Assembly (NCBI GenBank): GCA_051294905.1
Contig: CM119378.1
Location: forward strand, 11,656,001 to 11,720,000
Direction of reading: 5' to 3'
DNA: 64,000 nucleotides
Source of the DNA: Botryllus schlosseri
Taxonomy: Eukaryota
In this document: positions 7,567 through 61,601 of the stretch, one piece after another
How positions within the stretch are numbered: the first letter of the stretch is position 1
Layout: each line of letters opens with the position of its first letter
The notes under the pieces: generated by a model
Seen by the model: only the letters and a program-made list of their open reading frames with translations
Database searches by the model: none
Told to the model about the DNA's origin: nothing
Position numbers and translations under genes: made by a program

Positions 7567-7687
7567 CACAATGAGAAGTTAATGGAGGCGGAAGTGCTGG
7601 AATGTTTGTGCATTCTTGTAGCAAGAAGTTACAATGATATAACTGATTGGGTCATCTTACTGAAAGACGCGAGCATCATCAGTAGAG
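7567..7687 (+). CDS. Unit A exon 1 (coding part)
   Basis: HNEKLMEAEVLECLCILVARSYNDITDWVILLKDASIISR; donor g|gtttgc; paralog of 20381-20506; in-frame TGA at 7564-7566 immediately upstream. Confidence 0.65.
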
Positions 7688-10600
7688 GTTTGCTGTTATT
7701 CCATTTTGAAATAGCTCTAACTTATTATACAATCAACTGATGGTCTGATATTGGTTCGACCATGTCTATCAGATTCTCCAAACTGTTGACTCCAGACCGA
7801 CACCACCGGGCCCAAACAGTGGTTATGATAATTTATGGTTATGGCCTTGACTGAAAGACACTAGCCAGAATACCCCGAATGCATTCTGAAAGTTGAAATA
7901 GTTTACTTTGATTGAGTGAAACGTATGTTGGGTGGAATTGACTCTGTAAGATTGTGTCTTGTGAATACATTGATCTTTCTTTTTTGTATTAGGCAGCGGT
8001 ATACATGCTGTGAGCTGGCGCAGGGTGGATATGGGGTATGGTCTGTAGTCTATCCTAGCATGATTATGTGATTTCAATGTAAAAAAGAAACACATTTTAA
8101 GAATTTGAGCTATCGTCATATTCTTCATGAATATTATTGTAATAGATGAGAAAACGGTCTTACTGAAGTATCTACAAGATGATGGAGAATCTAAAGCTTT
8201 GAAAGAGTCGTGTCTCATCGTTTTGAAGAAGACATTGGACCAACAACTTTCCATTTTCCAAGATGAAGGTGAATTGCAGACTGTCTGTCCGTGAGCAATG
8301 GAAAATTTTTAAAAACAAGTTATAAAATGGTCTGACAAACAACAAGTATCGCTAAAGGCAATTGTCAGTTGGTATGCAATGATGAAGTATAGTTTGTGTG
8401 ATCAAGGAAATGAGCCAAATAGCATATTTGATGATAATATGTCAGTAAAAATTGTGTTCGGCAATTCTCCATATTGAGATATGGTAACTGAATTGAGGTA
8501 ATCCGAGAGTTTTGTGCGGTACACTGCGCCATTGCTTCTTTCAAAAAAGTTTCCAGATTTAATAACTATTGATTCTTCTGGATTATTGTTGTTTTATCTT
8601 ATCTGCTTGCTTGATATGCTATGACTGTATAGTGTACAGCATCGTCAAGTATTCATACGTAGCATGGTGAAGATATTGCTACAATGAGGATGTTGCTCAC
8701 TCTTTCGAGATTCTAATTTAAATAGAAAAAAAATGAATCACACAGACGACAGCTTGCTGGGAATGTCATGAAATGATTATGATCTTTTATAAATCGAGTG
8801 CAGCTGATATTTAGTTGAAACAGATCCTCCTACATAAAACTCAGTGTACAGTTCGTTGCAGCAGGTCTCTGGTGTTCCCTATTTCCAGAAATGCCCAATC
8901 TTTCAAATCTAGATGAAAATGACAAAATGCTTCCATATTATACTGGTTAGTTTTACCGTGGCAAATGTTTAGATTTCCCAAAAAGTGTCAAACGGGTTGA
9001 CATCATCGTGAAGCTGCTGCAAGATGGTCGCGTGAGTTGGCCAATATCGTATTTGATGAAGTCTTGGAACAGATTCGAGGAATCTGAACAAATTCACTCT
9101 GCAGCGACGTCATACTGTACTTGGTACGTAGTCATTATGTATTTTCATGTGGTTTTCTTAAAGTATTGCAGTACTGAATAGTGTACGTTCCATTTGTATC
9201 CAAGTGATTATGCAGCTTCTGGTCTACATTATCAAAGTCTTGATTTTGTTCAAATTTCTTTTTGTGTAGATATATCATGAAAAATTTTCTACTTGTTGAA
9301 TATTTTAACAAAAACAATTTACACCTTGAATTACATAAGTCTGACACATGACCTCATGCCACTGGCAAGTCATATGTACCTTTACAAATTTAATCAAATT
9401 AGTGATATCTTGAAGTATTAAGAGTATGTACTGATAACGTTGAATTTTTTCTTTTTTTTGAAGTTGTTGCAAAGAGTCGTAGTTATCCGAATGATATTTT
9501 ATTCGGATAGACTTGTCTGATCAGTAGGATTCGGGATTCTATATTACTGGTGTGCAATTTTTCCTCTACGCACTCACCAACTCTCTGCACGATCCCTTTG
9601 ACAACAGTGCGTAACGACTAAGAACAGGGGCATCACTTTGACTTTCTTGTGTGCGGCACAGATTTTTTGGTGTGCGGCGACTTTGCCAGCAGTACGCGGC
9701 CGCGCACTTGCATAGCTTAGAGGGAACATTGCTGGTGTGGAAGGGGCCTGTCGTTAAAGGGAGTTGACTGCTGTTGTAAGCTTCATCTTGTTGATCTATG
9801 AATCTGTGATGAATCAGTATATTACGTCAATAGGCTACCTATCACAGCTGGTCTATTACAATTACAATTAGAGCCCAACCAATATAGTCAGGTGATATTC
9901 AAAAGATTTGGCGTCTAGCTTGAGACTCATTTTCAAAACTTCGAAGCATTTATGTGAACAAATGCTACAGCCATTGTTATGCTTGCACAATGCACATTGA
10001 TCAAAAATAACTTTTTTTCCGGATCCCGGGGGCTCACTGATTAAATTGTTCGGTTTCCTAAAAACCTCTGCTCACCAAATTCGGCTTAATTCCAACCAGT
10101 ATACGCCTACAAATTTTTGAATCTATTTTAAAAAATTAAAAAATATTATTTTTCAAATTTTACTGTAAACTCCATCAAATTGTTTAGCTGTTTACAAAAA
10201 CGATGCAAAACAAATTTTACGCAATTCTGATCCATAGAACCAAGTTATTTGAGTTTTTCATTCATAAATTTGGGATTTTCTACTGTCCATGCTATTTTTG
10301 CCAATCCAAAACTTCCAGCTGAAATAACTTTGCTTCTACGGGTTGGAATTGAGTGAAATTTGTTTTGCCTCGTTTTTGTAGACAGTAAAATTTGAATATT
10401 GTTTTTCATTTTTCATAATAAATTTGAAAGTTTCAATTGGCTCTGCGTCCGCGTATACTGGTTGGAATTGAGCCAAATTTGGTGTGCAGCGTTTTTCAGG
10501 CAACCTAACAATTCAATCACTGAATCCCCAGGATCCATGAAAAAAAAAGTTATTTTTGAACAACGCTATTGGACATGGACATGTAATAAACTAGAAAGGC

Positions 10601-13600
10601 TGAATCAAGACACCTTTAAGCTTAAGAAATATATCATATTCCCAGTCTAGCAGACTCAAATTATAATTCTCTGACTTCCTACGACCATGCTGTGACATCA
10701 CGAAAATTCCCGATGTTACCTCTAATGGCCAATACCGATATTTCATTCAAATTGCGATATTGATATGATATTATCAGCGAACCGAATCCGTTGGGCTATG
10801 ATTACGATCACATACTTTCGAAATCAATAATGTCAGTACTACTTATAATTAGGATTGCAAATAATACAGTTTATTACAACTTTTTGTAATGTATTTAGCA
10901 ATAGAACAGAGCATCTCGTTCCTTCATTTCGCATTGACAAAATTTTTCTGATTTGTTTTCTAGTCTATCTGAAACAAATTGGATGCTAGATGTCATTCAT
11001 CATATGGCCATAACAGAGAAACCCCACTTGCAAGAAGAGTTTGCTAAGAAGGCGCAGGAAATTTTGGTGATTATTTGCATGCATATACAATATTCACTCC
11101 ACTACACCAGGGTGTTCCCTGTTCAGCCTATGGCATGCAGCGAAGGTTCCGTGTTGTAATGAACTGATAGGAAGATTCCGAAATGACAAGTTACGGTCTC
11201 TTAATCTTTCACTACTTCAGCCTAGTGCACGATTTGACAGTGTTTTGATCTTGATCTTTAATTGGCGTCACTTGATTAGTGAAACGCTAGGGTGTGCCAT
11301 AGTGATGGATTCATGGCATAGTTTTTACCCTTCATATCAGATACTCAACTGATCAGCTTCCCGAATGACACCGACACAGCACACCTGCGAACCTCTTACA
11401 CTACACCAGCGGAATAGCACTGCTCTAGGGGACTCGTGTGACTACCATATCGTCATGATTTCCAGTCAGAATGTACCATTCTGATAAAAAAAATCATGCC
11501 ATGGAATATTTCACCTTTTACCCTAACCTGTTCTTGTGACGAGCCCCGCCTCTGCCAATTTCTGACAGCCAAACATAAAACTTTCTTTGTATTGCTACAT
11601 GTTCCATCTGACCGAACGTTGTCTTCTTGAACTTTTTGAAGGAAAACAGTGACAAAATCAAATTGTAACGGGGACGTGTAGTAATAACTTCGTGGAATTT
11701 ACTCTTGGTTGTCGATCCTATGATTGTATAAGAGGATAATGCACATTTCTAAGATTATAAATCGGGTGTTCGGCAGCCATTTCTAAGATTATAAAGTAGC
11801 AATAAACACCCTTAAATCATTCGTAAATCATTGCGGCATTTGGTCTGAAAGGTTCACCACCATTGCACTTCATGTTAAAGTTACAGATCTGCATCAAGGA
11901 TAGTATGAAAATTGACCTCAAGATCGTGGAAACATGGAAAAGCCAATGCATATATTATCTATCATACATACTGCTGTTACTACTTCCCATTTCCATAGTG
12001 AAACAACCATAATTTCTTTTAAGCAACCCGATCCCACTCATGGAGACTGTCCAACAGATTTCAATGGCGACCAAAATCATTCAGGAGTGGAAGGAAAAAG
12101 CTCAGATGATGGTGGGTTTTACAGAATCATTATTCGTTTTGTTATATGAAAATCAAGGCCTCATTGCACCAATCAGGAATACCAATAGAAAGTTAGTGAC
12201 AAATACAAAAATAATTGCTTGAAATTACACTGTCCAACAGCCAATACGCTTCTGAAACGAATTGATCCAATCTTGGTCAATTTGAGGTCATCCATAACGA
12301 ATCTGAATTTGAAATTTGTGGCTTAGCTCTAGTTGTGGAGGAATGGCACCATGCCAAAATGTGACAAAATTCATTAAAAATATGAATTAATTAAAATTGA
12401 AACATCCGATTTAAGGGGCTCATATTGTGTCAAATCTGTTGCGTATCGACTTCTGAACACAATAGCTCCAAAGCAGATGAGACGTTGAGAGTTGTTGTTG
12501 CTCTCAGAAAGCAAAAAGTATCACCATTTTCTCTGAAAAATTCAGTTTCCTTACACTTGCATTTCTTGGATATTATAATCAATGTGCGCAACTAAACTAT
12601 AGGGACTATGCGAATATTCCCGAGTATTACGCTATGCAATGCAAATAATACTGAGCACCCCATAAAGGGAAAGTCACCCGGCGTTGTTGAAGGATCAGCC
12701 ATTGTTTCGATCACCCATTTTACCGTAAAGATCATTCGTTACTATCAGCCAGTTCGGCATTTAGAGAACGTTGCCGTTCCCAAAATGCCTTATTATCAGG
12801 GCGATTTTTTACCTAAAAACTGAATATTTTACACTAAAAAATGAAAATTTCGACATTTTTTAAACTTTGAAATACTTAATTTTGACAAAATTTTGCGCTC
12901 ATGTGTGTTAATTAAGCGTTTTCGCACATAATGTTAGAATTGTACTACTTTTCTCATTTTTAGTTTTCCTTGTCTGTCTTTACGATTTAACTTGGCCTGG
13001 TACAACGAAACGTACGTTGAGCATAACACCATGTCAACATATTTGTTTCATTTGACCGTTTATGATTCACAGCGATTAGACAATGGGCCGTCTACAACTG
13101 TAGGCCTATAATGTAGGCTACAAGCCGTAAATTAATGACTTGAAAACAATCTTGACGCTTTTTTGACCTAATGCTATAATTTTGACAAAAATTTGACTTT
13201 TTTTAATATTAAAAAAGGACATAACCCGACATAATCTCTGATCCTCCAACAACAGCAACAACGCCGTGTGACTTTCTCTCATTATGTGCTCAGTATTATT
13301 GAATCCATACTGCATATTGCTATGGAATATAATAAAGTAATGCATTCAGTAGGCAATACATGACAGATTTGATCCAATATGAACTCTTTAAATCAGAGTT
13401 TTTTCAATTTCAATTTTGTTTTGTATATATTTTTGAATGAATTTTGGCATGGTGCCATTCCTCCAAAACTAGAGCTAAGCAGCAAATTTCAAGTTGATTG
13501 ATATTCGTGATCGGCGACCCCAAATTAGCCAACATTGACCTGATTAGTTTCAGAAGTAAATTGAAAATATTAATTATATAATTGTCAAAGTATTTTATGA

Positions 13601-14152
13601 ATCGAGAGGCAAGAGTGTTTGTACTTTCAACATATGAACACCAAGCAAAGTGGTTGATATAGACCAGTGGTTCCCAACGTGGGCGATATCGCCCCCCAGG
13701 GGGCGATTTGGCGGTCTAGGGGGGCGAAAATGACGAAGGGGGCGACAGGGGGGCGAAAATAGCGAAGGGGGCGATGACGCATCAAAACGGCTGACCTTTT
13801 TTTTTTTTTTTTTTCTAGTCAACCCTCGGAAATTTAGTTACAAAAGTGTGTCAATTTAGAGATCGAGCCGAAAATTTGACCTTTGACCGGTGATTACAGT
13901 TTGTAATGCCCAATTTTCGGTACACAAAATTTGGGGGGCGATGATCGGTGTTGACCTTGAAAAGGGGGCGATGGGTCGAAAAAGGTTGGGAACCACTGAT
14001 ATAGACTGATATTTTGCGATTTAAATATTCTAGGGATAGAACCTTCTGCACAAGATTTTTATACAGATGCCTCCAATGAGATTACAAGGCCAAAACTCAC
14101 AACCATTTCTATCTTATATTCTGTGATCAATCCCCTGTCAATCTTCAGTTAA
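7567..14152 (+). CDS. Unit A: spliced CARD-like (death-fold) helical protein gene; 5' end uncertain, possibly a pseudogene
   Basis: Exons 7567-7687, 8146-8268, 8973-9123, 10964-11066, 12024-12111 and candidate 14067-14152 join in frame with GT-AG sites. From ATG 7582: MEAEVLECLCILVARSYNDITDWVILLKDASIISRDEKTVLLKYLQDDGESKALKESCLIVLKKTLDQQLSIFQDEDFPKSVKRVDIIVKLLQDGRVSWPISYLMKSWNRFEESEQIHSAATSYCTCLSETNWMLDVIHHMAITEKPHLQEEFAKKAQEILQPDPTHGDCPTDFNGDQNHSGVEGKSSDD... Paralogous to unit B. The CARD call is inference. Confidence 0.75.
8146..8268 (+). CDS. Unit A exon 2 (123 nt, phase 1-1)
   Basis: aatag| ... |gtgaat; same length and phase as 20870-20992, with clear peptide similarity. Confidence 0.82.
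8973..9123 (+). CDS. Unit A exon 3 (151 nt, phase 1-2)
   Basis: tttag| ... |gtacgt; DFPKSVKRVDIIVKLLQDGRVSWPISYLMKSW...; same length as 21300-21450. Confidence 0.82.
9560..9731. mobile_element. Short MITE (caatgttccctctaa / ttagagggaacattg family)
   Basis: Shares core ctcaccaactc...gtgcgtaa(c/t)gac with copies at about 18270-18470 and 43935-44126. Confidence 0.55.
9985..10585. mobile_element. Old foldback MITE with long degenerate inverted arms
   Basis: About 9990-10130 is the reverse complement of about 10430-10580. Related foldback at about 28045-28600 and arms at about 38150-38440 and 41690-41860. Confidence 0.55.
10964..11066 (+). CDS. Unit A exon 4 (103 nt, phase 2-0)
   Basis: ttttctag| ... 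|gtgatt; LSETNWMLDVIHHM...FAKKAQEIL; same length as 26902-27004. Confidence 0.85.
12024..12111 (+). CDS. Unit A exon 5 (88 nt, phase 0-1), acidic linker
   Basis: ttttaag| ... |gtgggt; same length and phase as 29391-29478. Confidence 0.72.
12240..13560. mobile_element. Degraded DNA-transposon-like element with long inverted arms
   Basis: About 12250-12420 is inverted relative to about 13385-13560 (agctctagtt...ggaatggcaccatgccaaaat). Internal gtaggctacaagc module recurs near 17550, 21640 and 63380. Confidence 0.5.
13665..13998. mobile_element. hAT (Charlie/Buster-type) MITE
   Basis: TIR cagtggttcccaac; 8-bp TSD atatagac; same family as 62488-62855. Confidence 0.9.
14067..14152 (+). CDS. Unit A candidate terminal exon
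   Basis: ttttatacag|at gcc tcc aat...; DASNEITRPKLTTISILYSVINPLSIFS*; phase-compatible; starts DAxN like 33830. Confidence 0.4.
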
Positions 14153-14902
14153 AAACCAGTACACCATAAAACATAATACGTTTTGCTGTTTTAACTAAAT
14201 CATTTATCTGAATACGGGTAAAGGGCCACTTTTCCAGCTTTGTTAGCAACATGGGCCACAATATTGTAATATCAAAATATAAATAAGTTGTTAGCATTAG
14301 CATTTGCTCTACTATACTGCGTGACTCAGTATAACCTTCTGCTCTCCAACTTGGCAATATACTGACTATTGAAGAAACATGGATATTGGATGCACACTAA
14401 ATATTTGATTTTTTGGTAAGCACTCAATTTTCATTTTGTATTACAAGCCACGCCCGTGTTTAGCAACGCTTAGCAGTGCCAATGGGATTCAGGAAAAAGT
14501 TGTGCTGCTTAGTCAAACACTGACAAAACTTCTGTTCGTATTTTGTTATTAACTGTTGTGTAATCTCTCATTGTGTAACGCTGACAAACACTACATATAT
14601 TTCTGAAATCCGTAGTCCATAGTGCAAATCAACTAGCAGTACTTCTATTTTACGTCACATGGTACAGCTTCAATGATACTGGGTACCTAATACACGTCAT
14701 TTTTGTTGGTGGCCCATTGCATGTTAAGACAAGGCCCATTACTTGCTTTCAACTAGTTTTCCACCGAGAGCACGCTACTGTTACCGACAAGACACTAGTT
14801 CTAGTCTAGTATTTAATGATTAGTAGGGCAACTTTTGCAAATTTTTTTACAACTTCAGAGAGCTTCTTAAAAACTTAGAAATTATGTAGTATTATGTTTT
14901 AA

Positions 14903-17379: not shown

Positions 17380-18130
17380 GTGATTAGTGATGACTAGGTC
17401 AATTTTTTTGACATGTCAAAAAAAGTCAAAATTAGGTCAAAATTGTAGTGTTGTTGTAAACAAAGTCTAATTTTTCTTACAACCTGCATTTCGTTTGTAT
17501 AGTAGATTTCGCACTGTCGGGGAACTTATCATTTGACATTTTACAGCTTGTAGCCTACTTTAGAGGCCTACCGTTGTAGAGGCCCATTGTCTGCTCATGG
17601 TGAATCATGAACATTCAAATAAAACAAATAGGTTGACATCGTGTTATGCTCAACGTATTAAAATATACTAACTGAAGCAAGACTGATTGGGCATTGCATG
17701 GTTCTTATATCAAGAAGCGCATGATGAAAAATTGTGATGTACACATCATTGTCAGAATGAAGCAACTAGGTGTGTCACCAGCAGTGTACGCATGCAAAAC
17801 TTCAGTGTTGTCAGCCAAGAACTGCTACTGTTGAACGTTCTTTCTCCATTCTTGGAAAGCTACTTAGTAAGGACAGATACTTTCTACCCGAGAATGTAGG
17901 AAAGTATCTTTCGTTGTACTAACAGATTTTAATTATTTTTACCATAATACGTGATATAACTACTGGAATTCTTCGTAGGGCCAGATTTCGTTAAAATCAA
18001 GTTTTTACATGAAAAAATTTGTCACCACTTTTTGTGTCAAAAAAGTTTTTTCAGGCCGAACTACTACGTAAGGACATACAGTTCGAACCATAAATGACGA
18101 TAAGTAGTACAATTCTAACATTATGTTGGA
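17380..18130. repeat. Interspersed repeat family; direct copy about 21480-22200, inverted copy about 62240-63450
   Basis: Long alignable blocks, e.g. gtgtcaccagcagtgtac...cagtgttgtcagccaa and acccgagaatgtaggaaagta. Confidence 0.65.
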
Positions 18131-18150
18131 AAACACCTAATCTGCTAATA

Positions 18151-19310: not shown

Positions 19311-19562
19311 TCATGTACTCATATACTGCGAATGCTGGGTGCGTACTATACATGGGTACAGGCTTTTTCCCAGAACATACACGTCATTTTAAGGGTGCGT
19401 ATTATACATGGGGGCGCACTATATTCGGAAAATTACGGTAAATGTAACATAAGTCAATATCAAAATCGATGCGAATAAACTAAATGTAGTGAAGTTTCAT
19501 CACTAAAAGCAGACTCGTATATTAGAACAAAGCAGATGTCAATCAGATTCGATCCAATAGAT

Positions 19563-20282: not shown

Positions 20283-20380
20283 CAATAGATGCACTCCGAT
20301 ATACCATAATGAATTGAAGATAACCATTATAGCATTATCACACTCGCTACGTTCATGTCACATTTCATTTTTGCTTCAAG

Positions 20381-20506
20381 TTCAAAGCGATGAGAAGTTG
20401 AAGGAGAGTGAATTGCTGGAATATTTGTCCATTCTTGTACTGAAGAGCTATGAAAAATTACCTGATTGGATCAACTTTCTGAAAGATTTGGATATTATAA
20501 ATAGAG
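20381..20506 (+). CDS. Unit B exon 1 (126 nt, phase 1-1)
   Basis: ttttgcttcaag| ... |gtttgt; paralog of 7567-7687. Confidence 0.75.
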
Positions 20507-23500
20507 GTTTGTAGTCTTCCTTTTTGAAATAGGTTTAAATCTTCATTCAGCGCAAAGAGTCGTAGTGGTAGTGGGTGACTTTTATCACGACATCAAGACA
20601 ATAGTGGTCGAACTGCTGCATGAGCAGTGAGAATAGCTATATAGATCTCGATAAAATTTCTGAAATGACATCGAAATTATACGTACAATTTATCGACGAT
20701 TGTCTACCAGCGTTACCCGAGCCAGATTTTCATTAATATTTTCGGAATAATCCAAACTGTCATTAGTTTTTAGGTGGTAATGGTCTGTATTGTGTTCCAA
20801 AATAATTATCTTGTTTGGATATAAATGAGACTGAACTGTGGTAACTTCATCCGCCTCTCATTTTAATAGATGAGAAAAGGATCTTCCAAGATTCTCTACG
20901 GAATGATGAGAGATTGAAAGTATTGAATGAGTCGTGTAAGGCTGTTTTGACAAAGACATTGGAGCAACAAATTTTGGTATTTCAGGATAATGGTGAGCCT
21001 AAGCATACGTTGAATTTTAGACTGTTATAAGTTATTATAAGTCATGAAAAGTTATTAAAACAAAACCGTTCATTCATCTGGAGGCGTACTAAGAGTAAGC
21101 ACTGCCTATAACAATCACTAATTTTTGTCCATGTTTCATATAGTGGAGAACATGGTGTCTTCTAAAAAAGCCTCTGGCAATCTGTCCTCCACTGTTCCAT
21201 TACTGCGGAAATTCAAAGCTCTTTTATTATAGGCAAAAAAAAAATACAAACTACCACTAGAAAGTACCGATATACTGTTTAACCTTGATGGATTTGCAGA
21301 CTTCCAAGGAGATGCTAGACTTGTCGATATTACCATGAATTTGCTACAAGATCGTCATCTGAAATGGCCAATATTATATCTGATAAAGTCGTGGGACAAA
21401 TTGGAGGGATCTGATGAGATCCGATCTTTGGCAATGACTTATTGTGCTAGGTATGTACCCTATTTGTTTGTTATAATTACGGCAATTTTTTTGACATGTC
21501 AAAATGAGACAATTGTAGAGTTAGGTCAAAAAAATTGTCAAAATTGCTTACAAAGTCATAATTTTTTTGCAACCTGGATTTTCATTTGTATCGTAGATGT
21601 ATACACTGTTTGTGAACTTATCATTTGACATTTTACAGCTTGTAGCCTACTTTATAGGCCTACCATTGTAGAGGCCCCATTGTCATTGTGAATCATAAAC
21701 GGTCAATATCTGAAACAAATAGGTGGTGTTATGCTGAACATACCACAATATCCTAACGGAAGTAAGAATGCTTGGACATTGGTTCTTATATCAAGAAGCG
21801 CAATATGAAAAATTATGATGTAGACAGCATTGTCAGAATGAAACAACACGGTGTGTCACCAACAGTGTACCTACAACTTCAGTGTTGTCAGCCAACAACT
21901 GCTACTGTTGCATTTTGGGATACTAGGTAAGGACACACACTTTTTACCCGAGAATGTAGGAAAGTATATTTCGTTGCACTACAACAAATTTTAATTATTT
22001 CTACCATGATGCGTGATGTAACTACTGGAATTCTTCATAGGTCCAGATTTCGTTGAAATAAAGTTTTTTTCATGTAAAAATTTGTCAATAGTCGAGTCAA
22101 AAAAGTTTTTTTCAGGCCAAACTACTTCGTAAGGATAGACAGTTTCAACCAGAAATGAAAATGAGGAGTAAAATTCTGGCCTTATGTGGTAAAACACCTA
22201 ATTTAGATATATGAGGTCAAAATTACGTTTTTGAAGGTAAAAAATGTCAAAATTTCGATTTATCATCCGTTTTATAAGTTAAAAAAATTCTCCCAAGTTG
22301 TAATATATTGGCGTGCAGTGGTAGCATTGGTTAGCTCCACGTAGCACTGCCACACATCCCACACTTCTAATTCTCACACTTAAGGCAGTGGTCCCTAATC
22401 CGCGGTCCGTGGATCAATTCTGACCAGTGTACCTCCACTTCTGTAATTGATTTTACTTGCCTTTGCAATGTTGCCCATTTCAATAGTTATGTGGTGTGAT
22501 GTTGGCATTGTATGGTAGTTATAAGGCAGGGGTGGGCAACATACGGCCCGCGGGCCGGATTCCGTCTTATATGATATTGTGGCCCGCGGCTACAGTGTAC
22601 CGAGATTCCCCGCTACTTGCTTAATATATCACTATATTAGTGATAGTATGTTATTGTATACATGTATGCGCACTGCGCAGCGTGCGAGAGTGGAGCTTAC
22701 GCCTAAGTTCGTTGAAGCGGGAAGACTTGCATTATCGGCATTTACGATGTACTCAACCCAAATATCGTTTGTGGTAATCATTGTGTTTGTCGACTACAAT
22801 GGTCATTTACACCAGGCCGATATTTCTTACTTTTGATTACGTAGCCGCCGCACGGCACACTTCTAGGCTTTTGTAAGACACCGCTTATGCCAGGGGTCGC
22901 CAACTCAAAATGGGTCGCGGGCCACTTTTCAAATGTCGTAGAAGCCGCGGTCCGCATGGATTCAATATCGAGATAAAATAGGCCACATAGTTGAACAACG
23001 GCACTATCTCGTCATCTACTCAGCCCTAATGAATTGATATCTTGGTAAATTTGGGGTACCGGGCTTATCGAACGCTTTGAAATCTTAATTAATGATTGCA
23101 CCGTGTGCTGATTGATCAGAGAGAAGCAGACATGGCGGCACCTGTATGACAATGCTCTTCTCGAATCCACATTATCTTCGTCATTAAGGACGAGAAATGG
23201 CTTTGAAGTGACATTGCTGTCGTTAACATACATTCACTAAATACAATTTACACCTTATATATGTGAATAAATGGGCGAATAATGTGTCGATTCAACAATC
23301 CGGCCCGCCAAGTGCTTAATTTTCATATATCCGGCCCGCCGACTGGAGAAGTTGCCCGCCCCTGTTATAAGGGATGGTGTAAACCTCTGAAAGGTTCAGG
23401 TTCATGTGAACCCGATCTTTTTTGAAAGGTTCTGTGCGAACGTGAACCTCATAACGTCACGTGATGTCATATTGCTAATTCAGATCCCATATTCCAGTGA

Positions 23501-26500
23501 AATGATAGCCTATATCAGTGGTTCTCAACCTTTTTGACCTCGCGGCACCCTTTGAAAATGAAAAATAGTTCGCGGCACACTAGCACAGTGGTTCTCAACG
23601 TTTATTGCCTTACGGCAACTGTAAACTAACAGAATACTTAGAAGCCCCCACACCCACAATCACCATCGCACAGAGGTGGTCTCTGACGAAGTACTTCTAC
23701 TTTTTCGAAGCACTGAAGTAGGCTTTGTTCTGCTTCGAAGAAGAAATTACGGTATTTTCTATGTCTGCGGACATGTCATAAATACGTCTACGAATGGTAT
23801 CATTTGACATGGGAATCGTTTTCAATTCTGCTGCAGCTTTGGTCCCAAACATTTTCTTTGCAATGCCAGTGCAAGCCGGAAGAATAACTTTATCCGCTTC
23901 AGCGGTCTTGAATTTTTAGCTTTTACCGCTACCACCTCGTAACTGTCCTGCTGCGATCTCGTGAACTTGGGCTGCGCTTATATACTATTTCATAAGATTT
24001 TTTTGACAAGCTCGATCGCCACTAACTAATACAGAGGCGTATACATGGCGGAGATAGCGTATAGTGGTGAGCGTCGGCGCCATATACGCCGGCAGCCCGG
24101 GTTCAATTCCCGCCGTCGGAGGTTACTCTGGGCTGCTCGTCCCCCGTGACGCTGTTCTACGGCGACAAAAAGCCTAGAAAAAAGAGAAAGATATATAGCT
24201 TCTAAAATTGGACCGACGATGATAGAATAACACCGAAGAAGACTGTTACGTCGGGCACTAGGTAGAGGCGGATGCCACTTTAACCCTTACGAGGTGGGCG
24301 TATCATATTTGATATGGCATGTCTCCGACACCGATTTCTCCATGTTGACACGCCCTAGACATCGGGTTATACGTTTTTTGAAAAGCTGAGACTTTTCCGA
24401 TGTATTTGGTACCGTACTCAAAAATTTTGGTTCGTAAAAATAAACAAAAAATTAAAAATTAAATAAAATATGGTTATCACCTAAAACTTCCGGGTATTTT
24501 CCGAGTGGGAAATATTGTCGGAAAATCTGCCAGAACATCAGAAGTCAACATGTACGGTTTTCTGTGTAGATTTTCACCGTTTCAAACATCAATACGTTTT
24601 CTGGAAAGTTTTCTGAGGGGGATTTGTAAATTTTGGTCACACTTCAGTGATTTTCAAGATCTAGGTCAAGTTCAAGTGCAAATGCAGTCGGCATAGGAGT
24701 CATACTATGCCTGCAAATGGTTGGATATGACAAAAGAAAGCATATCGCGTTGTTTTATGCCATAAACCGGACTGTAGGGGCCGATTGAGTCTTGATCATT
24801 AACTTGACCTTGATGACCACTCACTGACCACGCCCATTTGTAAATTTTATATGTATTTTCCATTTTTCGATATCTGACGAACCGCGCGGTTTACAACCAT
24901 GGTTGACGGCTTGTTTGAAACCAGGCAACAGTGGCTACGCACTAAAGCATCACATTCCTCTCTCTGACGCCATCCTGAGGGTCAGCCTTGAAAATTGAGA
25001 GAGAGAGAGATTTGTTGGGGGGAAAAGCTTGTTTATTTAAACTTATTACAAAACCTCAGACATGTCATGGGGCGTCGATCAAGGGTGGAATCGGTAGAGG
25101 GCTATACTCCGCCCACTTGTAAACCGGAACGGCCCAGATTCAAGACCTGGTGGGGTCCCGGTGAGAATTTGAAAATTGAAGGTCAATTCTGCAAAATATG
25201 GCCCCACCTCGTAAGGGTTAAGAGATCTCAACTGGTTGGTTGGTTGGTCGTTCAGTATCCCCCTATCTGTTCACTACATCGCATTGTGTCTTGTACAACG
25301 CATTGTACACTGTGTGTGTGTGTGTGTGTGTGTCCAGGGCAGATGACAATATAATCTGACGATTATTGATTGGCGATTATTATTACATGGATGGCAGACG
25401 CATTTCAATTTCAACGCAGATCGTGTACCACGTGTGAGGATATCAATACCTGAATATAGTTCTACTGACAGCCACCCGCAGTACAATTATAGCTCCAACA
25501 AACCGGTACAATAACCTCAGCGCAGGGTAAATTTGTTAACCGATATAATATGATCTGATCAACCCAACTTATCAATTCTCAAACACGTCCCCTGCAACAT
25601 AGCGTTGCGCTCCGAGCCTACATTTTAACGGCAATGCCGGCACGCTACCTAACAATCGCAATATGGATGGCTTGGCTATGTTTTTAATTCGAATCTGTAA
25701 ACTTGATCATCATATCCATCCAAAGGAGTTGATTTCTCGCTGGTGATTACGAACACAGGGAGGATTTGAAATCCGCATTGTCATACAGGCGCAGCCATGT
25801 CTGCTCTGCTCTGCGACCGATCGACGTATTGTACAAAACTGAATTCACCCTTCAACTTCAAGGCACACGATATGTCGGGTAAATCGAATTCGCGGGGATA
25901 TTGATTGCGGGCTGTCAAATGTACAAACTTCACATTGCGCTCGAATTAGATTACTGATTGTTTCTATAGACTAGAATTATTTTGCGCATAATTTCAAAAT
26001 TTCGAAGAAATCTCTCGCGGCACACTTGCGAGACGTAAATGGCACACTAGTGTGCCGCGGCACACCGGTTGAGAACCACTGGCCTATATTAATGTATACG
26101 TACACGATACCTAGCGATGACTCGGGCCACATAATGTCACAATGCTGAAGCACATATTGACGTTTTAAATGTCGCCAAATGTATCAACTGGGGCAATCAA
26201 AAGATATAATAATCGCCTTTAACGGTCTAGGCCAGACCGGACAATGTCTTTGGCCTCTGAGTATTGCTATGTTGATATTTAGCAGACATCGATGAATTCT
26301 TTACATAAATATCATTGATTGGTTGATTAAGCATCATTCGCTGACTACCTATACTTGTTGTGTATTCCGCTCTTGATGTTATATTATTGCGGGTCAATCT
26401 CACAGCAAAGAGTCACTCAATATTCGAGCAAGCTTTTGTAACAAAACAAGTAAACATTCGGATTACCAAGGTGCATGCTCCTTTAGTGCTGATTTTTTTA

Positions 26501-29500
26501 TGCTGCCAGCACAATCCATATAGTGGCCCGCAGTTGAAATGTAATAAATTTCAACCAAAGATGTTATAATGAAGTCAAAATTGTAATTTATAAGAAAGTT
26601 TCACAGTACAGAACCTACCAAGGTTCGTTTGTGAACGTGAACCTCTAAATTTCTGAGGTTCACACACAGAACGCGAACGTGAACCTCACATTCACACCAC
26701 CCCTAATAGTTATGAATTAAAGTTTGATCCAATTAGTGCTTTCTGATTTGGAGTCAGATATAGAATGCTGAATATAATAGTAGGCCTATATTGAAAAGAT
26801 ATAGGTTTTCTGTAAAGCAAAATGAGCTATGCACGCATTGGTGTTAAACTGCTGCATGAAATTTTTATTACTGGTAATAATTTCGCTAATCTGTTTTCCA
26901 GCCTGTCTGAAACAAATTGGATGTTAGACTTCATTCACCATATGCTCACAGCAACAGATTCCATTTTACAAGAAGGGTTTGCGGAAAAGGCAAAAGAAAT
27001 TCTGGTGAATGCATTCATGCAATGATATTTTGTTCTTTGTGTAATTTTTTGTGTGTACAAATGAAACCCAGGCATAACTTATTTGGGATCAAATTTTGTC
27101 ACAAATCACATAGATTTGATCACACTGAACAGTTTTCTGCCGATTACTGCTGTTACAGGTGAACATTGACTGAGGGGATCCGGTTCTATTCCAAGTATTA
27201 GTTTCGGCGTCTGCCTACCCCTCATTTTCCTTAAGAAACCATGGTAGATATGATCCACTTTGACTGTCTCTTTATAAACCAGTTTCGGCATTACATTAAT
27301 GCATCAAATATAGTATCAAACTCTGGAGGTAAACCTGTGATGATAATTGACATCAACACACTGAGAACTTTCATTCATTCAATCATTTATTTAATATTAT
27401 TATCATCTATTTAAAGCAGTGGTTCCCAACCTTTTTCGACTTATCGCCCCCTTATCAATCGCAACACAAATTTTTGCCCCCCATATTCACTAATCCATAA
27501 ATCTGATCGCTGGTGCATTTACTAAAAAAGGGCTATTTTTCCGAGGTGGTAGTTACTCGGAAAACTGGTTTCCATGTCTACTCTCCTTTGAGTTGACCTT
27601 TTTTCGCATTGGACGCACGCCTTGGACTAAAACAGAGGTTCTTAACCCATCGTCATTAACGCCAGTGTCAAAATAGACCCCAACCAATCAATGATGTGAG
27701 CCATATTTTAATGAAATGTTTGATTGTTCTTGGCAACCATCTATTCCTAGTCTATATTATACACTATCAATCAGTATTCTCCATCAGATGATTGACTCTA
27801 ATACCTCGTCGCAATGAGCAATATATTGCAAATGGGTCCGATATTGAGGGGAAAGGGTTTTGATCTTCCCTATTTCAGCTTATTGTGACCCCTATGCTCA
27901 TTTTATGCTATATAGATTCAAGAGGGCGTGTCGGTAAAGCTTTTTGATCACTTTCTAACTCTTACCGAAATGAGGTCAATTTGTATCCCACCTTAGTGAT
28001 CTATGGTGAAATGGGTAACCTATAGGAATCGCGGGGTTTGGAGGAATGAACATTAGGGTTGTTCAAAAATAACATTAAAAAAATTGCGGTTCATACCTAA
28101 AATTGTTAGGTTGGCTAAAATCGTTGCAAACCCAATTTGGCTTTATTCCAACGAGTAGAGGTGAATCTATTAGATAAAATTTACTATAAAAAATATAAAG
28201 TGAAATTTTCAAACTCTACTGTCTACCACATAAATTTTTTAGGTTGTCTACAAAAACTACGCAGAACAAATTTGATTAATTCCAGCTCGTAGAAGTGAAG
28301 TTATTCGAGTTTTTCATCAATAATTCTATAATTATTCAGGGTAAATAGTATTTTTTCAAATCCAAGATTTTCAACTGCGATAAATTGAGTCAGATTTGCA
28401 TCAGGCAACTTGAGGATTCCATTGGGTTGACAGTAAATACGAAAATTATACAAAAAATTTCAACTCTAATGGGCTCACTTCTAGGTGGTAAAATTGAACC
28501 GAATTTGGTGTGAAACATTTTTTAGCCAACCTAGCAATTTTAGCTGATAGCCGCAATAATTAAAAAAATATATTTTTGAACAATCCTAATGAACATTCAT
28601 CCGTAAAACATCATGCAAGAGGTCTTTAGCAGGATTAGAAAATAAATGAGCAATTTAACTGATTGGGGCAATTTTTACCGCACCGCGCCATTCTTGTACC
28701 GATACTGCGCCTCAGTGGTGATTGGTTAACCGAGGTTCAAATGAACCCCTTGGGCTCGCTACGTGACAATCTCAGTGGCTCGTCGGTCAAGACACACACT
28801 TAACTCATAGAATTCATGGAGACAATCTTGTCTTAGTCATCATTTACTGCAGGGAGTCGGTAGTCACAGTGTTACTGTTGTGTTGCTATGTTGTGTGCAT
28901 GTGTCGCATACACAGCAGATGCTGGGGTTTGAAATCGAAGACTCGTCCCATTGAAATGCCGATTCTGTCTCCAATATCTATTTACTTATTTGTGATTGAG
29001 CAATTGACATTACGCTCGTGTGTTTTGACCGAACGATATGATGGCACTATCCAAGATATGATGGCACTTTGTGATTCGCCAAAGTCGTTCATATTAGCTA
29101 AGGGTCCGTCAGGTCAGTAAAGGTTAAGAACCACTGGCCTAGAGCAACTAAATAAGAGGCACGGGCTACACACCGAATGAAAATAAACAGGAGATACCAG
29201 GAAACGATAGACACCGAGTACGGTCATGCTCAGCAACTGTTGGATTGCCAGCTAAATGCTGATCAAAAGTCGTGATATGTTTCACTTGATGGATCCATGC
29301 GTTTTCTTGTATTTTATACAGAACATGTAGTAATTCGACGATGAGTAACTACTTGGTTATTTCTATTCATCGAACCACTTTTCTTTCAAGGAAACTTGTT
29401 TCACTGATGAAGACTTTCCATCGAATTCAAGTGACAGACAACTGGCCATGGAAGGGGACCAACAAAGTTGCGACAATGGTAGGCTTCGTAAATCCATCTG

Positions 29501-32500
29501 TTGCCCTAGATGTTCACGAGGCACTGATAATTCTACCACTTTCATATGAAATATTCAGTTATATTCAATTGCAAGCACCAATGAACAAACACTCACGAAA
29601 TGATAGAGAAGTCATTTGAAAATGAAATATGAGAAGATTAAAAACACAAGTGCAGCTATGGCTATTATATACCATATATATAATATTTATAATAATTGAT
29701 AATTGCTTATTTGCAGTAGAGTAATAGTCGTAATATAGATTTTCACATTTTTGAAAACTTCTCGATTGACTCTTCGATACATATCTTAAATCAGCAAGCT
29801 GATTGATGTCTGTAAATATTTTTTCCTTATTTTATGTCATTATCGAAATAATATAGCAGAGTACACTGAAATTATAATGCCTTGTCATCCATTGAAAAAT
29901 GTTTTGAAATTAGTTGATTAACATTGAAATATCTCAAAAGTCCATTTTCACGGAGAAACAAATAAAAGGTCACAAATAAACAAATATATTGTAATTATGG
30001 TAATAGATTCACCCTATTCCTACCAAACTGAGATGAAGATCAAATGTTAAGTCACAGAATATAACGAAAATATCAATTCCTAGGTGAAGAGTTGATTGAT
30101 AGTACACTGAGATTATTCAATACTATACCTCATATCTCTTTACTGTGTGTCATTGTGCAGTGTGTGTTCTTGAATGCTTGAAAGTATTGTACAACTAGTC
30201 CAGTGGTTCCTAACCGGTGTGCCGCGATGCACTACTGTGCCGATGGAACCGCTCAGGGGTGCCGATAGAAAACGTGGTAATCAAGATCAACGTGTAACAA
30301 AAAATAAGGTATCCCAATTTTGATTGTGGCATAATAGGTGGTTCTGTTATTTTTACCCGCCCAAGACAAACAATTTACAATAGTGATACAATGAGCATAT
30401 GAGAGGATGTCGAAATGACCAAGTACGGTCTCTCTATCTGGCATCCCCCTCAGTCTAATGCCAGTGTTCGATCTCTCTCCTTATTTTTAGGCTTCCTCAC
30501 TCTTTTTATTCTTTTCCTTGACTTGTTTCTACAGCAGGTATTTCTCTGAGTTTTTGTTATTGTAAAGACGCTGTGAGCAAAGCCACACAGCGGTAGATAA
30601 TCTCAGATAAACCTCCAACGCTACGGAATTTGGTACTTCCAAGAATCGAGCCAGGGCGTCGACCCTCAATGGTGCTGGTGCACCACATTTAGTAGCATTT
30701 GTCAGTGTGATAACTAAACAAAAGGTCATCAATTGGGACCTTTTTTCAAGTCACCCCTATCAGAATTCAGAACCGGGGGTTGAACAGTAACATGACGCAG
30801 GTGATGACCTTGCCCAATCTTCAAAATCTATTTTCATTTTTCATCAGACCAACATTGCTTATTATGATTCCTGAGATGACAACTTATAGATAGCACGACC
30901 CACTTTGCTTCAGATCTTTGGTAAGGCACCACTTATGCAGATCACATGGCGAGGAGAAGTTTAGATAAACTTTCAACAATTGGAAAGGGATGCACTGACC
31001 TCGGCCTGACCTGCAACTCATTTGTGATGCAGACTTGCAACGGTGCAACGAACCATTACACTACTCGCCACTCAGAGTACTATAGCAGGGGTGGGCAGAC
31101 CCGATTCATGCACGAGCCACATATCAAAAATTTTAGCTTTAGAAAAGCCACAACAAAAAATTCAAAAATACGAAGTTATTACGCCACAATGAAATGTTTG
31201 GCTATCGAAAGAAGTTTATTATTCTGTTGAGAGAAAGAGAGTCTTTGTTTTTAGGGTGCGTCTGCGCCTGGACTGCAAGGTATTTGAAATCAGGCTGATA
31301 TGACGTCAAAGCAATGCGGAGCAGTTCCTTAAATTGCTGATGAGAATTTAAGGTTTCAATACAACATCCATTGTAGCAGTATATTTATTAAACTCGAAGA
31401 CTTTTCGGGTGCCTCTTTTCAAGAGTTATCGGCACACTAAAGGGATTTAAACAGATTTAAAAGCAAAACCAAAAAGGCAAAGTATGACGCAACAATCAAA
31501 ATCACAGACCATGAAATTCGCATCGTATCAATGGCAACAATAACAAACTACGAAGTATACGGACATACGGTACTATAGTAGCAGCACAATTTGTAAATAA
31601 ACAATTACACGCACGGAACAACACGCACTAATGAGAAATTTGTAGGTTATAGAGGAAATCTTTCTGTCTGCATAAAATAGGTTTGCTCAACTGAATAATA
31701 GTAGACTCCAACACTTTTAAATGAAACACAGACCTACCACGCGCAATGACAGTGAACATATTGTCATCATAGTGCTGTGCACAGGCAAGGTTTTCGCTCA
31801 GATGCTGACCGATTGACGAAGCATATGCTTGGTAATCATCATAGCAGTCTGTTTTTGCAGCCAATTTGCACTGACGTGCGAGCTCCGTGCGATCATTTGC
31901 GCATGTTTTTGACCGAATCAATTTTGGGATATGCTGCTTAATACGCTCAAACAATCTTTGAGATGTACGTCCTACAACACAGTGGCACTTGTATTGGTAA
32001 ACAACATTACTTGCATCAAAGGCAGGAAGTACATCTTTTCGAGAGTTGGGTAACAAGGGTTTCGTCGTGTACACTACATGCGTGTTAACGCTGTAGTAGC
32101 AACGGTGAACAGCCGATTTAATAAGCTTTTCAAATCGGCTAGACACGTTACCTAGCCAAGGTAGATGTAAAAATGCCGGGCATTTTTCTGGGCCATATTT
32201 TGGAGCTGTATCCGATTTTTTCAATACCCTAGAGATGGAGCATTTTAATATGTGGTCCGGATAGCCATTTTTGGAGAGAATCGAGTGGATATCATCCAAT
32301 TCTCGTGACAGTTTTTCCGGTGAGCAGAGGCGCAAGGCGCGATTAACGAGAGATGAAATGAGGTTTAATTTACACCGCTTCGGGCAGAATGAATCCCAAC
32401 GAATATGACCAGTTTTCTGTACACCGACGTTAAAAACGTTTGTCCTGATCTCTCTACTAAGACGTCTAAAAAGGGAAGGGCAGCATCAGTTTCCTTTTCC

Positions 32501-33882
32501 ATGGTAAATTGTAGAGCTGGATGGAGACAATTCAATTTTTCGAAGAAATTATTACACTCTCGCTCATTTTTAAAGGCAACAAAGGTGTCATCGACATATC
32601 TAAAATAGAGGAGAGGTTTTGCGACGTTTTCAAACAATTTCTTTTCATGGTATCCCACGAATATATCGGCCAGACTAGGTCCCAACGGTGAACCCATCGA
32701 AATACCATTGCATTGACGGAACATCGTGTCATTAAAGCTGAATTCAACGCTACTAGTAGCAGTTTGCAACAATTCAAGAAATATTTCACGCGGTAGTTTC
32801 GGAGGTTCAAGCGTGCCATCATAAAGCGCGTCTGCGCAGATTTCGAAAGTTTCCGACAATGGTACGTTAGTAAAAAGACTTTTCACATCAAATGAGCTAA
32901 GAAATACATTGGACGGATTTAATTTGGCGCGTTTTAATTCGTCTACATACGAGAACGAGTCGCGAACGCAGTGGTGCGTATACCCGGAAAGTCTTCGAGT
33001 TTAATAAATATACTGCTACAATGGATGTTGTATTGAAAGCTATATTCAAGTTCTGTAGCACGAACCAGCTATTTAAGAATTTAAGGACGATTTCAGCTTG
33101 CTAATGTTATTGCTTCCCATAAATCTGTCTTCGTTAGGTAACTCGTGGCAAAGTTTTGGTTTTTGGTTTCGAACGTTTCAAGTTACCGTTGCATTTTCCT
33201 ATTCATACTTTTTTTCTTCTTCCAATGATCTATATAGGCTTTTTGCCACACTCTGCAGTTATTGCTAGCCTTTCCAATACAAATGGAAGAGTCGTATTCG
33301 CCATTGTCATCCCAGAAATGATCGTGACCTGCGCTGCCATGATTAATTATCAAGTTCATTATCAAGTTCATCGATGATTTATCATTGATTGATGACTAGG
33401 TACCATTGTTGTGGGTGAAACGTTTATGTGAACTCGGATCAAGAGTTCAGTTGCAAAGTTTTTACACTGTAGTACCAACTTCCTCTACGCATAATCATTT
33501 GTGCAATCTTTAAAGAGCCGCAGTCAAAGGCCGAAAATGCCATAGTTTGCTCGCCCCTGTGCTCTAGGATACCGCATATGTTTTCGTTTGGAGAGGGTGA
33601 CGCGAGGTCGAAAAGATTGTGAATCACTGAGCTAGTCTATGGTTATAGCTCAATATATATATATTGAGTACATACTATTTGTTTTCTAATTCTACATGTT
33701 TCCTAATTATTTATGTTATATTATAATTGTATTTCTATGGAATTGATGCTGGCCAAAGCCGTGATAACATAAACGAATTTGTTGCAGTGACTGGCATTTT
33801 ATAATGCAATAATTTCTTGTCATTTTCAGATGCTGTCAATATGCAAACTGATGAAATTTGGCCACCCAATTCTTGGCAATAA
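20381..33882 (+). CDS. Unit B: spliced CARD-like (death-fold) helical protein gene; first exon not found
   Basis: Exons 20381-20506, 20870-20992, 21300-21450, 26902-27004, 29391-29478 and candidate 33830-33882 join without stops: VQSDEKLKESELLEYLSILVLKSYEKLPDWINFLKDLDIINRDEKRIFQDSLRNDERLKVLNESCKAVLTKTLEQQILVFQDNDFQGDARLVDITMNLLQDRHLKWPILYLIKSWDKLEGSDEIRSLAMTYCASLSETNWMLDFIHHMLTATDSILQEGFAEKAKEILETCFTDEDFPSNSSDRQLAMEGDQQSCDN... The CARD call is inference. Confidence 0.8.
20870..20992 (+). CDS. Unit B exon 2 (123 nt)
   Basis: ttttaatag| ... |gtgagc. Confidence 0.83.
21300..21450 (+). CDS. Unit B exon 3 (151 nt)
   Basis: tttgcag| ... |gtatgt. Confidence 0.83.
22527..23364. mobile_element. hAT MITE
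   Basis: TIR caggggtgggcaac / gttgcccgcccctg; 8-bp TSD ttataagg; inverted partial copy at about 59680-60103. Confidence 0.87.
24047..25333 (+). mobile_element. tRNA-derived SINE (tRNA-Glu/Asp-like head), interrupted by a piggyBac-type element, probable (TG)n tail
   Basis: A-box-like tagcgtatagtgg, B-box GGTTCAATTCC (24100-24110), hairpin CGGCG-CCATATA-CGCCG; acceptor stem does not pair; (TG)11 at 25311-25333. The 3' limit is inferred. Confidence 0.6.
24284..25217. mobile_element. Non-autonomous piggyBac-type element
   Basis: TTAA on both sides; TIR cccttacgaggtggg / cccacctcgtaaggg. Confidence 0.82.
26902..27004 (+). CDS. Unit B exon 4 (103 nt)
   Basis: ttttccag| ... |gtgaat. First 14 codons versus unit A: 4 synonymous and 1 non-synonymous difference. 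Confidence 0.85.
27417..29136. mobile_element. Region bounded by Charlie-type MITE ends, with an internal foldback (about 28045-28600)
   Basis: cagtggttcccaacc at 27417 and ggttaagaaccactg ending 29136, but no matching TSD, so possibly two separate elements. Confidence 0.4.
29391..29478 (+). CDS. Unit B exon 5 (88 nt)
   Basis: ttttctttcaag| ... |gtaggc. Confidence 0.75.
31628..32979 (-). mobile_element. Penelope-like retroelement, 5'-truncated: reverse transcriptase plus GIY-YIG endonuclease (pseudogenised)
   Basis: SFDVKSLFTNVP, QCNGISMGSPLGP, YFRYVDDTF, LPFLDVLV. Frameshifting deletion near 32413, then IRWDSFCPKRCKLNLI...NGYP...VVYQYKCHC-VGRTSQRLFERIKQH...KVLESTIIQLSKPILCRQ. Confidence 0.92.
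33830..33882 (+). CDS. Unit B candidate terminal (or frameshifted internal) exon
   Basis: cattttcag|at gct gtc aat...; DAVNMQTDEIWPPNSWQ*. Confidence 0.4.
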
Positions 33883-33904
33883 TTCAGTCGGTTTTATGTA
33901 ATAT

Positions 33905-51621: not shown

Positions 51622-51663
51622 CAAAAGATCCAACAGTTTCCCATATCGATAGAACTCTCTCGG
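51622..51663 (+). CDS. Symmetric (1-1) linker exon
   Basis: 42 nt, AKDPTVSHIDRTLS, strong donor gtgagt. Confidence 0.55.
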
Positions 51664-61544: not shown

Positions 61545-61601
61545 CTCCCGCCCAGAAAGATGACAAGCTAAAGAAAAGGACCAAGATCGAAACAATAAAG
61601 G
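61545..61601 (+). CDS. Symmetric (1-1) basic linker exon
   Basis: 57 nt, APAQKDDKLKKRTKIETIK, donor gtgagc. Confidence 0.6.

What the first reader, a model, noticed from the sequence alone, without database searches (positions are those of the whole stretch)
7567..33882. Hidden tandem pair of spliced genes encoding a divergent RIG-I/MAVS-type CARD-like module
Seen in sequence: two units 13-20 kb apart share exons of identical length and phase (123, 151, 103, 88 nt) with GT-AG sites and splice into open frames. Exon 4 starts with 4 synonymous versus 1 non-synonymous difference, and the introns are largely unalignable, which points to selection on protein. Established knowledge: RIG-I/MDA5/MAVS CARDs carry a conserved Trp before helix 5 (RIG-I LQEEGWFRGFLDAL and LLRSDKENWPKTL) and an [IL]xxxExxxI helix-3 entry. 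Inference: LSETNWMLDFIHHM, LLQDRHLKWPILYL and IINRDEKRIF match these patterns. No helicase, NACHT, caspase or TIR domain is visible in the window, so this may be a lineage-specific cluster of CARD-only adaptors or decoys.
Basis: partly seen in the sequence, partly recalled or inferred. Interest (0 to 1): 0.8.

Follow-up and report, generated by a model that had tools for sequence, protein, structure and literature searches.

The report
Truncated two-module orphan helical gene
The two "hidden genes" are the two repeated halves of one unannotated sea-squirt gene for an acidic, all-helical protein of unknown family; the copy in this window has lost its tail end, and no test run here shows it to be a CARD immune adaptor.

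Summary
Two collinear exon sets on the + strand share exact lengths (123, 151, 103, 88 nt) and phases, have canonical AG/GT sites, and their introns do not align.

They are one gene, not two.
- Unit A starts at an ATG (7582) preceded by an in-frame TGA.
- Unit A has no terminal exon, and its last exon splices in phase into unit B.
- Unit B has no in-frame Met for 95 codons.
- A+B plus a short exon ending at 33882 give one 404-codon open frame.

The same chromosome carries two paralogues. In them the same ten exons continue, still open, through six more exons (629 and 641 codons). The window copy has disabling lesions only in that C-terminal part: a 2-nt deletion creating TAA in exon 11, and two nonsense codons in a later exon. 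Its ten N-terminal exons are intact. Pairwise dN/dS is 0.22-0.47.

The product is an acidic 168-aa helical module, twice, with polar linkers. It has no Pfam or PDB match, and no annotated homologue turned up. CARD identity is not supported: Pfam CARD and CARD_2 hit elsewhere in the genome, not here, and profile comparison with this genome's own CARD_2 domains stays sub-threshold (probability ≤10%).

The parts
7539..7581 (+). Conserved leader just upstream of the start codon. It holds an in-frame TGA and an AG 6 nt before the ATG, which could be an SL trans-splice acceptor (inference only).
   Evidence: Homology to paralogue P2 begins at 7539 (84% over 154 nt) and is absent further upstream. 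Sequence read.
7582..7687 (+). Exon 1 (E1a). ATG start, first helix of module a, ends in phase 1.
   Evidence: Unlike the E1 of unit b, it has no AG acceptor at the homologous position.
8146..8268 (+). Exon 2 (E2a), 123 nt.
   Evidence: AG/GT, length conserved in all six units.
8973..9123 (+). Exon 3 (E3a), 151 nt. Carries the W-P-I-S-Y-L-x-K-S-W core.
10964..11066 (+). Exon 4 (E4a), 103 nt. Carries the L-S-E-T-N-W-M-L-D motif and ends in phase 0.
12024..12111 (+). Exon 5 (E5a), 88 nt. Acidic/polar linker. Its GT donor in phase 1 leads into unit b.
20381..20506 (+). Exon 6 (E1b), 126 nt. AG acceptor in phase 1, no in-frame ATG.
20870..20992 (+). Exon 7 (E2b), 123 nt.
21300..21450 (+). Exon 8 (E3b), 151 nt.
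26902..27004 (+). Exon 9 (E4b), 103 nt.
29391..29478 (+). Exon 10 (E5b), 88 nt, polar linker.
33830..33897 (+). Exon 11 (E6). It is an internal exon in the paralogues. Here a 2-nt deletion puts TAA in frame at 33880-33882, which ends the 404-codon frame, and the 3' end and donor are also altered.
51622..51663 (+). Remnant of exon 12 (E7), 42 nt. Intact, but downstream of the stop.
51727..51853 (+). Remnant of exon 13 (E8). Has a +3 in-frame insertion, and GC instead of GT at the donor position of the paralogues.
60495..60797 (+). Remnant of exon 14 (E9), 303 nt. Two in-frame nonsense codons (TAA 60631-60633, TGA 60643-60645) sit where the paralogues read sense codons.
61190..61326 (+). Remnant of exon 15 (E10), 137 nt, open.
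61545..61601 (+). Remnant of exon 16 (E11), 57 nt, lysine-rich. Ends in a GT donor, so the ancestral gene went on beyond this point.

Best explanation
The window holds one protein-coding gene on the + strand, not two. It is one of three paralogues within about 250 kb of one chromosome of what other agents' notes call a sea squirt.

The ancestral gene encodes, in order:
- a 168-aa all-helical module (four exons) plus a 29-aa acidic/polar linker (one exon);
- the same five-exon block again, which is an old internal tandem duplication;
- another polar stretch and a further helical C-terminal region (at least six more exons).

In the window copy a 2-nt deletion in exon 11 creates a stop. The downstream exons have since gained two nonsense codons and a changed donor. 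What remains is a 404-codon frame (46.7 kDa, pI 4.6, no hydrophobic stretch long enough for a membrane span) made of only the two modules.

The ten N-terminal exons have no lesion, while the shorter C-terminal part has at least four. From this I infer that the truncated two-module protein has been kept by selection after the truncation.

Most likely mode of action (inference, not shown): a non-enzymatic cytosolic protein-binding module. The truncated copy could then act as a module-only competitor or partner of its full-length paralogues. The fold family of the module is not established, and a death-fold (CARD) identity is not supported by any test run here.
For: Gene model:
- Exon lengths, phases and AG/GT sites are identical in all six units of the genome.
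- A+B+E6 gives 404 open codons.
- Unit b has no in-frame Met for 95 codons.
- E1a in the window copy and in paralogue P2 has an in-frame TGA followed by ATG, and lacks the acceptor that unit b's E1 has.
- Homology to P2 starts only 43 nt upstream of the ATG.
- The unit a to unit b intron is 300 nt in P1 and 1172 nt in P2.
- The 16-exon joins are open for 629 codons in P1 and 641 in P2.
- Wa groups with P2a and Wb with P2b, so the a+b pair predates the gene duplication.

Selection:
- Pairwise dN/dS of the helical part is 0.22-0.47, and higher in the linker in most pairs.
- Branch estimates: window copy 0.46 (bootstrap 95% 0.24-1.75), P2 0.27.

Truncation:
- Lesions are seen only from exon 11 onward.
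- At about 4 lesions per 730 nt, about 6 would be expected in the 1162 nt of N-terminal exons. None is seen (Poisson P about 0.002, my arithmetic).

Orphan status:
- No Pfam or PDB hit exon by exon.
- An exon-3 profile searched against 1.84 billion representative proteins finds only three short genomic ORF fragments and no annotated protein.
Against: - No expression or junction evidence.
- Run indexing shows no RNA-type run holding at least 5% of the words of 7400-12200. The 5-12% held for 20300-27100 could come from transposon fragments.
- No spliced product of this family appears among proteins called on public assemblies.
- A stop in exon 11 with exons downstream could expose the mRNA to nonsense-mediated decay.
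- The branch dN/dS interval for the window copy includes 1.
- The lesion-density argument rests on about four events.
- The function is inferred only from composition and architecture.
Confidence: 0.6

Rival explanations
1. One reading: the module is a divergent RIG-I/MDA5/MAVS-type CARD (death fold), and the locus encodes CARD-only adaptors or decoys.
For: - hhalign of the six-unit module alignment against the five CARD_2 domains of this genome's own RLR-like and MAVS-like genes scores 23.1 (P 0.003).
- That alignment puts module residues about 20-126 on the whole CARD, in a roughly stable register across alignment variants.
- 0 of 300 column- or block-shuffled controls reach that score.
- The same module scores only 10-13 against CARD (PF00619-type), Death and Bcl-2 alignments from the same genome.
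- The truncated copy behaves like a domain-only paralogue.
Against: - HH probability is only 0.5-10%, and with CARD subsets the register changes.
- Pfam CARD_2 and CARD six-frame scans of the genome hit 3 and 5 other places and nothing in this cluster.
- Exon-wise hmmscan and a PDB profile search are empty.
- The module is 168 aa with no internal repeat, so it is neither one 90-aa CARD nor two.
- No helicase, NACHT, caspase or TIR domain or membrane anchor is attached in the paralogues as far as they could be read.
Confidence: 0.12
2. The whole window copy is a dead, unexpressed pseudogene. Its N-terminal frame is still open only because too little time has passed.
For: - The C-terminal half is clearly decaying.
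- There are further degenerate copies of exon 14 at C8:11559509 and C8:11742123, so the cluster makes pseudogene debris.
- No RNA-type run holds unit A.
- The branch dN/dS interval reaches 1.75.
Against: - There are 0 lesions in 1162 nt and 20 splice sites, against at least 4 in about 730 nt of the same age downstream.
- The branch dN/dS point estimate is 0.46, with 91% of bootstraps below 1.
Confidence: 0.28
3. A and B are two separate genes, either a tandem pair or the two cistrons of an ascidian operon resolved by SL trans-splicing.
For: - The units are 12-16 kb apart in the window.
- Unit b's first exon has a good AG acceptor, which could also serve trans-splicing.
- Run indexing gave hits for B but not for A.
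Against: - Unit b has no in-frame ATG for 95 codons.
- Unit a has no stop or terminal exon, and ends in a conserved phase-1 donor that matches unit b's phase-1 acceptor in all three paralogues.
- The gap is only 300 nt in P1.
Confidence: 0.05

Closest known systems
CARD_2 (PF16739), the tandem CARDs of RIG-I/MDA5 and the CARD of MAVS
   Same: Helical and of cytosolic character, tandemly repeated at the N-terminus of a longer protein. There are short helix-Trp-helix motifs and a weak sub-threshold profile similarity to this genome's own CARD_2 domains.
   Different: No Pfam hit. The module is 168 aa rather than about 90, with no internal repeat. No helicase or membrane anchor follows. The genome's true RLR-like and MAVS-like genes lie on another chromosome (C6).
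CARD-only proteins of primates (CARD16, CARD17, CARD18: truncated duplicates of caspase-1). This comparison rests on established knowledge; it was not tested here.
   Same: A tandem paralogue is cut down by a premature stop to just its N-terminal interaction module(s), which stay open while the rest decays. This is the 'works like' analogy for the window copy.
   Different: The domain here is not shown to be a CARD. No partner, pathway or expression is known.
HEAT/ARM-like helical repeat proteins
   Same: All-alpha, with helices of 10-20 residues. Faint leads only: SMG1 at E 0.078 on exon 3, and HEAT/ARM clusters at cosine 0.84-0.88 for paralogue exon 14.
Taxon-restricted (orphan) gene clusters evolving by birth and death
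   Same: Three tandem paralogues plus fragments on one chromosome arm, fast protein evolution (dN/dS 0.2-0.5), gene conversion between the two units of P1, a truncated member, and relatives found only as ORF fragments in two other public samples.
   Different: Nothing unusual relative to this class, apart from the clean internal five-exon duplication.

Membership tests
CARD_2 / CARD (death-fold superfamily) | Significant match to the Pfam CARD_2 (PF16739) or CARD (PF00619) profile | tested here: not met
   Six-frame scans of the whole genome find 3 places for CARD_2 (searched at E<=10) and 5 for CARD (searched at E<=0.001), and none on C8 near this cluster. hmmscan of ten exon peptides at E<=10 gives no death-fold family. 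Caveat: the domain is split over exons, so sensitivity is reduced.
CARD_2 / CARD (death-fold superfamily) | Six-helix antiparallel Greek-key bundle of about 85-95 residues | not testable with these tools
   The spliced module has no reference, so it could not be handed to structure prediction or fold search. By eye the 168 aa hold about nine helices, and hhalign finds no internal repeat.
CARD_2 / CARD (death-fold superfamily) | Profile-profile similarity to bona fide members | tested here: inconclusive
   hhalign against five CARD_2 domains of the same genome scores 14-23, probability 0.5-10%. That is above all 300 shuffles but below any accepted threshold, and the register is unstable with subsets.
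CARD_2 / CARD (death-fold superfamily) | Attached effector or anchor typical of CARD proteins (helicase, NACHT, caspase, kinase, or a C-terminal TM as in MAVS) | tested here: not met
   Downstream exons of all three paralogues have no Pfam hit. The window product has no TM-like stretch (maximum Kyte-Doolittle 19-residue window 1.19). The paralogues could only be read as far as exon 16.
HEAT/ARM helical repeats | Significant profile or fold match to a HEAT/ARM family | tested here: not met
   Only SMG1 at E 0.078 and atlas cosine scores of 0.88 or less with low recognition. The exon-14 model has no fold match.
Expressed, spliced protein-coding gene | Junction-spanning RNA reads | not testable with these tools
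The run index is ambiguous.
Expressed, spliced protein-coding gene | Open frame, canonical splice sites and purifying selection across paralogues | tested here: met

The most novel reading that the evidence does not exclude
The 168-aa module is a previously undescribed helical interaction domain, possibly a very remote and enlarged relative of the death fold. The window copy would then be a selected module-only decoy that regulates its full-length paralogues, an ascidian parallel to the CARD-only proteins of primates.
Probability: 0.12. Interest if true: 0.6.

Novelty: new variant of a known kind. Interest (0 to 1): 0.3.

Why it matters
If expressed, this is an unannotated gene family restricted to sea squirts. 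Its domain matches nothing in Pfam or the PDB, and it shows three common routes of gene evolution in one place: internal exon-block duplication, tandem gene duplication, and truncation to a domain-only paralogue.

That makes it a useful annotation fix and a candidate for fold discovery. As it stands it does not bear on RIG-I/MAVS signalling. The practical value of this check is that it removes an attractive but unsupported immune-adaptor label and replaces two phantom genes with one documented gene model and its breaks.

Tried and rejected
Both sequencing-run runs gave only ambiguous word shares.
- Full-length homologues. An exon-3 profile against 1.84 billion representatives gave three exon-sized ORF fragments. 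The word-based searches gave nothing further: the RLR 2CARD and paralogue exon 14 found no protein, and the exon-3 profile found only one of those fragments again. The metagenome scan was empty.
- Exon-wise Pfam and PDB searches: nothing.
- Internal repeat within the module: none.
- C-terminal region as a third module: score 15.0, inside the block-shuffle distribution (83 of 120 shuffles reach it). Rejected.
- A Bcl-2-like reading prompted by the N-W motif: hhalign score 11.8, which is background.
- Fold of paralogue exon 14: AlphaFold pLDDT 76, five helices, no match in PDB (Foldseek and VIA-align) or AFDB clusters. Atlas leads are below the useful range.
- Folding or HHpred-type search of the spliced module: left out, because a spliced protein has no reference and long sequences may not be typed.
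Full report
**1. The observation**

An all-against-all comparison of open segments and a sensitive blastn show four collinear blocks shared by region A (7.5-11.1 kb) and region B (20.4-27.0 kb), at 49-68% amino-acid identity. Nothing else is shared except transposon fragments. A fifth shared exon, 88 nt and encoding a polar linker, appeared when the paralogues were added.

Every exon has AG...GT.

**2. One gene, not two**

- Unit A begins at ATG 7582. An in-frame TGA lies 15 nt upstream, and there is no acceptor at the position where unit B has one.
- Homology to a paralogue starts only 43 nt upstream of the ATG.
- Unit A has no stop. Its fifth exon ends in a phase-1 GT donor, and unit B's first exon opens with a phase-1 AG acceptor.
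- Joining A, B and a short exon at 33830-33882 gives 404 open codons. The chance of this is about 3e-12.
- Unit B has no in-frame Met for its first 95 codons.

A search of the assembly (495.5 Mb; window = C8:11656001-11720000) finds exactly six units. They form three + strand pairs at 11.43, 11.52 and 11.66 Mb. In the two other pairs (P1 = L001-L003, P2 = L004-L006) the intron between unit a and unit b is 300 and 1172 nt.

Wa is closest to P2a and Wb to P2b. The two P1 units are closest to each other, which suggests gene conversion. So the a+b arrangement is older than the gene duplication.

**3. The gene used to be longer**

In P1 and P2 the exon that ends the window's frame is an internal exon with a GT donor. 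It joins in phase to five more conserved exons. The 16-exon joins are open for 629 and 641 codons and still end in a donor.

The window has the same exons at 51622, 51727, 60495, 61190 and 61545, but with these lesions:
- Exon 11 has a 2-nt deletion that creates TAA at 33880-33882, and its 3' end is altered.
- Exon 13 has GC at the paralogues' donor position.
- Exon 14 has two in-frame nonsense codons, at 60631 and 60643.

The ten upstream exons (1162 nt, 20 splice sites) have no lesion. At the downstream density about six would be expected (Poisson P about 0.002, my arithmetic).

**4. Selection**

- Nei-Gojobori dN/dS of the helical part is 0.22-0.47 in all 15 unit pairs.
- The linker exon is less constrained in most pairs.
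- Three-taxon branch estimates give 0.46 (bootstrap 0.24-1.75) for the window copy and 0.27 (0.14-0.58) for P2.

Together with section 3, I read this as a truncated two-module gene that stayed under constraint. A recent pseudogene is the main rival.

**5. What the protein is**

The product is 46.7 kDa with pI 4.55 and no membrane-like stretch. It consists of two 168-aa modules, about nine helices each by eye, each followed by a 29-aa acidic/polar linker.

- Exon peptides have no Pfam family apart from one chance-level row, and no PDB relative.
- The downstream exons have none either.
- A profile of exon 3 run against 1.84 billion representative proteins returns only three exon-sized ORF fragments. 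Two come from one public run and one from a metagenome. No spliced or annotated protein appears.
- The family therefore looks unannotated and taxon-restricted. Earlier notes of this scan call the genome a sea squirt; I did not check this.

**6. The CARD claim**

Pfam CARD_2 hits three places on chromosome C6: two intronless RLR-like genes with two CARDs and a DExH helicase, and a 408-aa MAVS-like ORF with a C-terminal anchor. Pfam CARD hits five places. None is in this cluster.

In scripts I built the spliced module alignment (six units) and compared it with the five CARD_2 domains of those genes.
- hhalign gives score 23.1, P 0.003, probability 10%. Module residues about 20-126 align to the whole CARD.
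- None of 300 shuffled controls reaches this score.
- The register is roughly kept across alignment variants, but scores fall to 14-19 with fewer sequences, and the register changes with CARD subsets.
- Against CARD, Death and Bcl-2 alignments of the same genome the module scores 10-13, which is background.
- The module has no internal repeat.

This is a lead, not a membership. I put a death-fold identity at about 12%.

**7. What could not be done**

- As a substitute I folded the one long contiguous exon of the family, paralogue exon 14 (100 aa). The model has pLDDT 76 and five helices, with no fold match in PDB or AFDB and no death-fold entry among the rows listed. That region is not detectably related to the module.

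**8. Verdict**

The 'two genes' reading is replaced by one internally duplicated gene that is truncated in this window. The CARD reading is unsupported but not excluded. This is an orphan, fast-evolving gene cluster of an ordinary evolutionary kind, with modest interest until the fold and expression are known.

Noticed in passing
own genome, e.g. G000:C4:13120613-13126176, C1:28028912-28032308, C5:25440527-25450634, C3:10095784-10105885: At least 150 near-identical full-length Bcl-2 (PF00452) ORFs of 170-228 aa are spread over all chromosomes. Many form inverted pairs 3-14 kb apart. Death-domain ORFs lie about 2 kb outside several pairs. This looks like a high-copy mobile element with long inverted ends that carries apoptosis-type genes.
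   Followed up: no
own genome, L008/L009 (C6:18.28 Mb) and L010 (C6:26642844, - strand): Two adjacent intronless RLR-like ORFs (two CARD_2 domains followed by a DExH helicase). Also a 408-aa MAVS-like ORF with an N-terminal CARD_2, a long Ser/Pro-rich middle and a C-terminal hydrophobic anchor. So this genome appears to have an RLR-MAVS axis.
   Followed up: partly
window 57219-59156: Inverted repeat with 673-nt arms that are 98% complementary and separated by 592 nt. It is a young foldback element inside the former intron between exon remnants 13 and 14.
   Followed up: partly
own genome C8:11559509-11559812 and C8:11742123-11742424: Two more copies of the family's exon 14, both with stops or frame breaks, lie 19-26 kb downstream of the P2 and window copies. 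The C-terminal part of the gene has been duplicated again and is decaying.
   Followed up: no
window 36269-36525 (and 35977-36042): A block 71% identical to paralogue P2 (17321-17550 of the concatenated L004-L006 sequence, which falls in L005), about 2.4 kb after exon 11. It matches in two frames, so it is probably non-coding: a conserved intronic element or an old UTR.
   Followed up: no
window 663-1323 and 44126-44970; 17384-18141 and 21467-22202; 13665-14004 and 62488-62861: Several dispersed repeat families at 74-87% identity, including a 73-nt unit present five times, fill the long introns. They account for everything A and B share outside the exons.
   Followed up: partly
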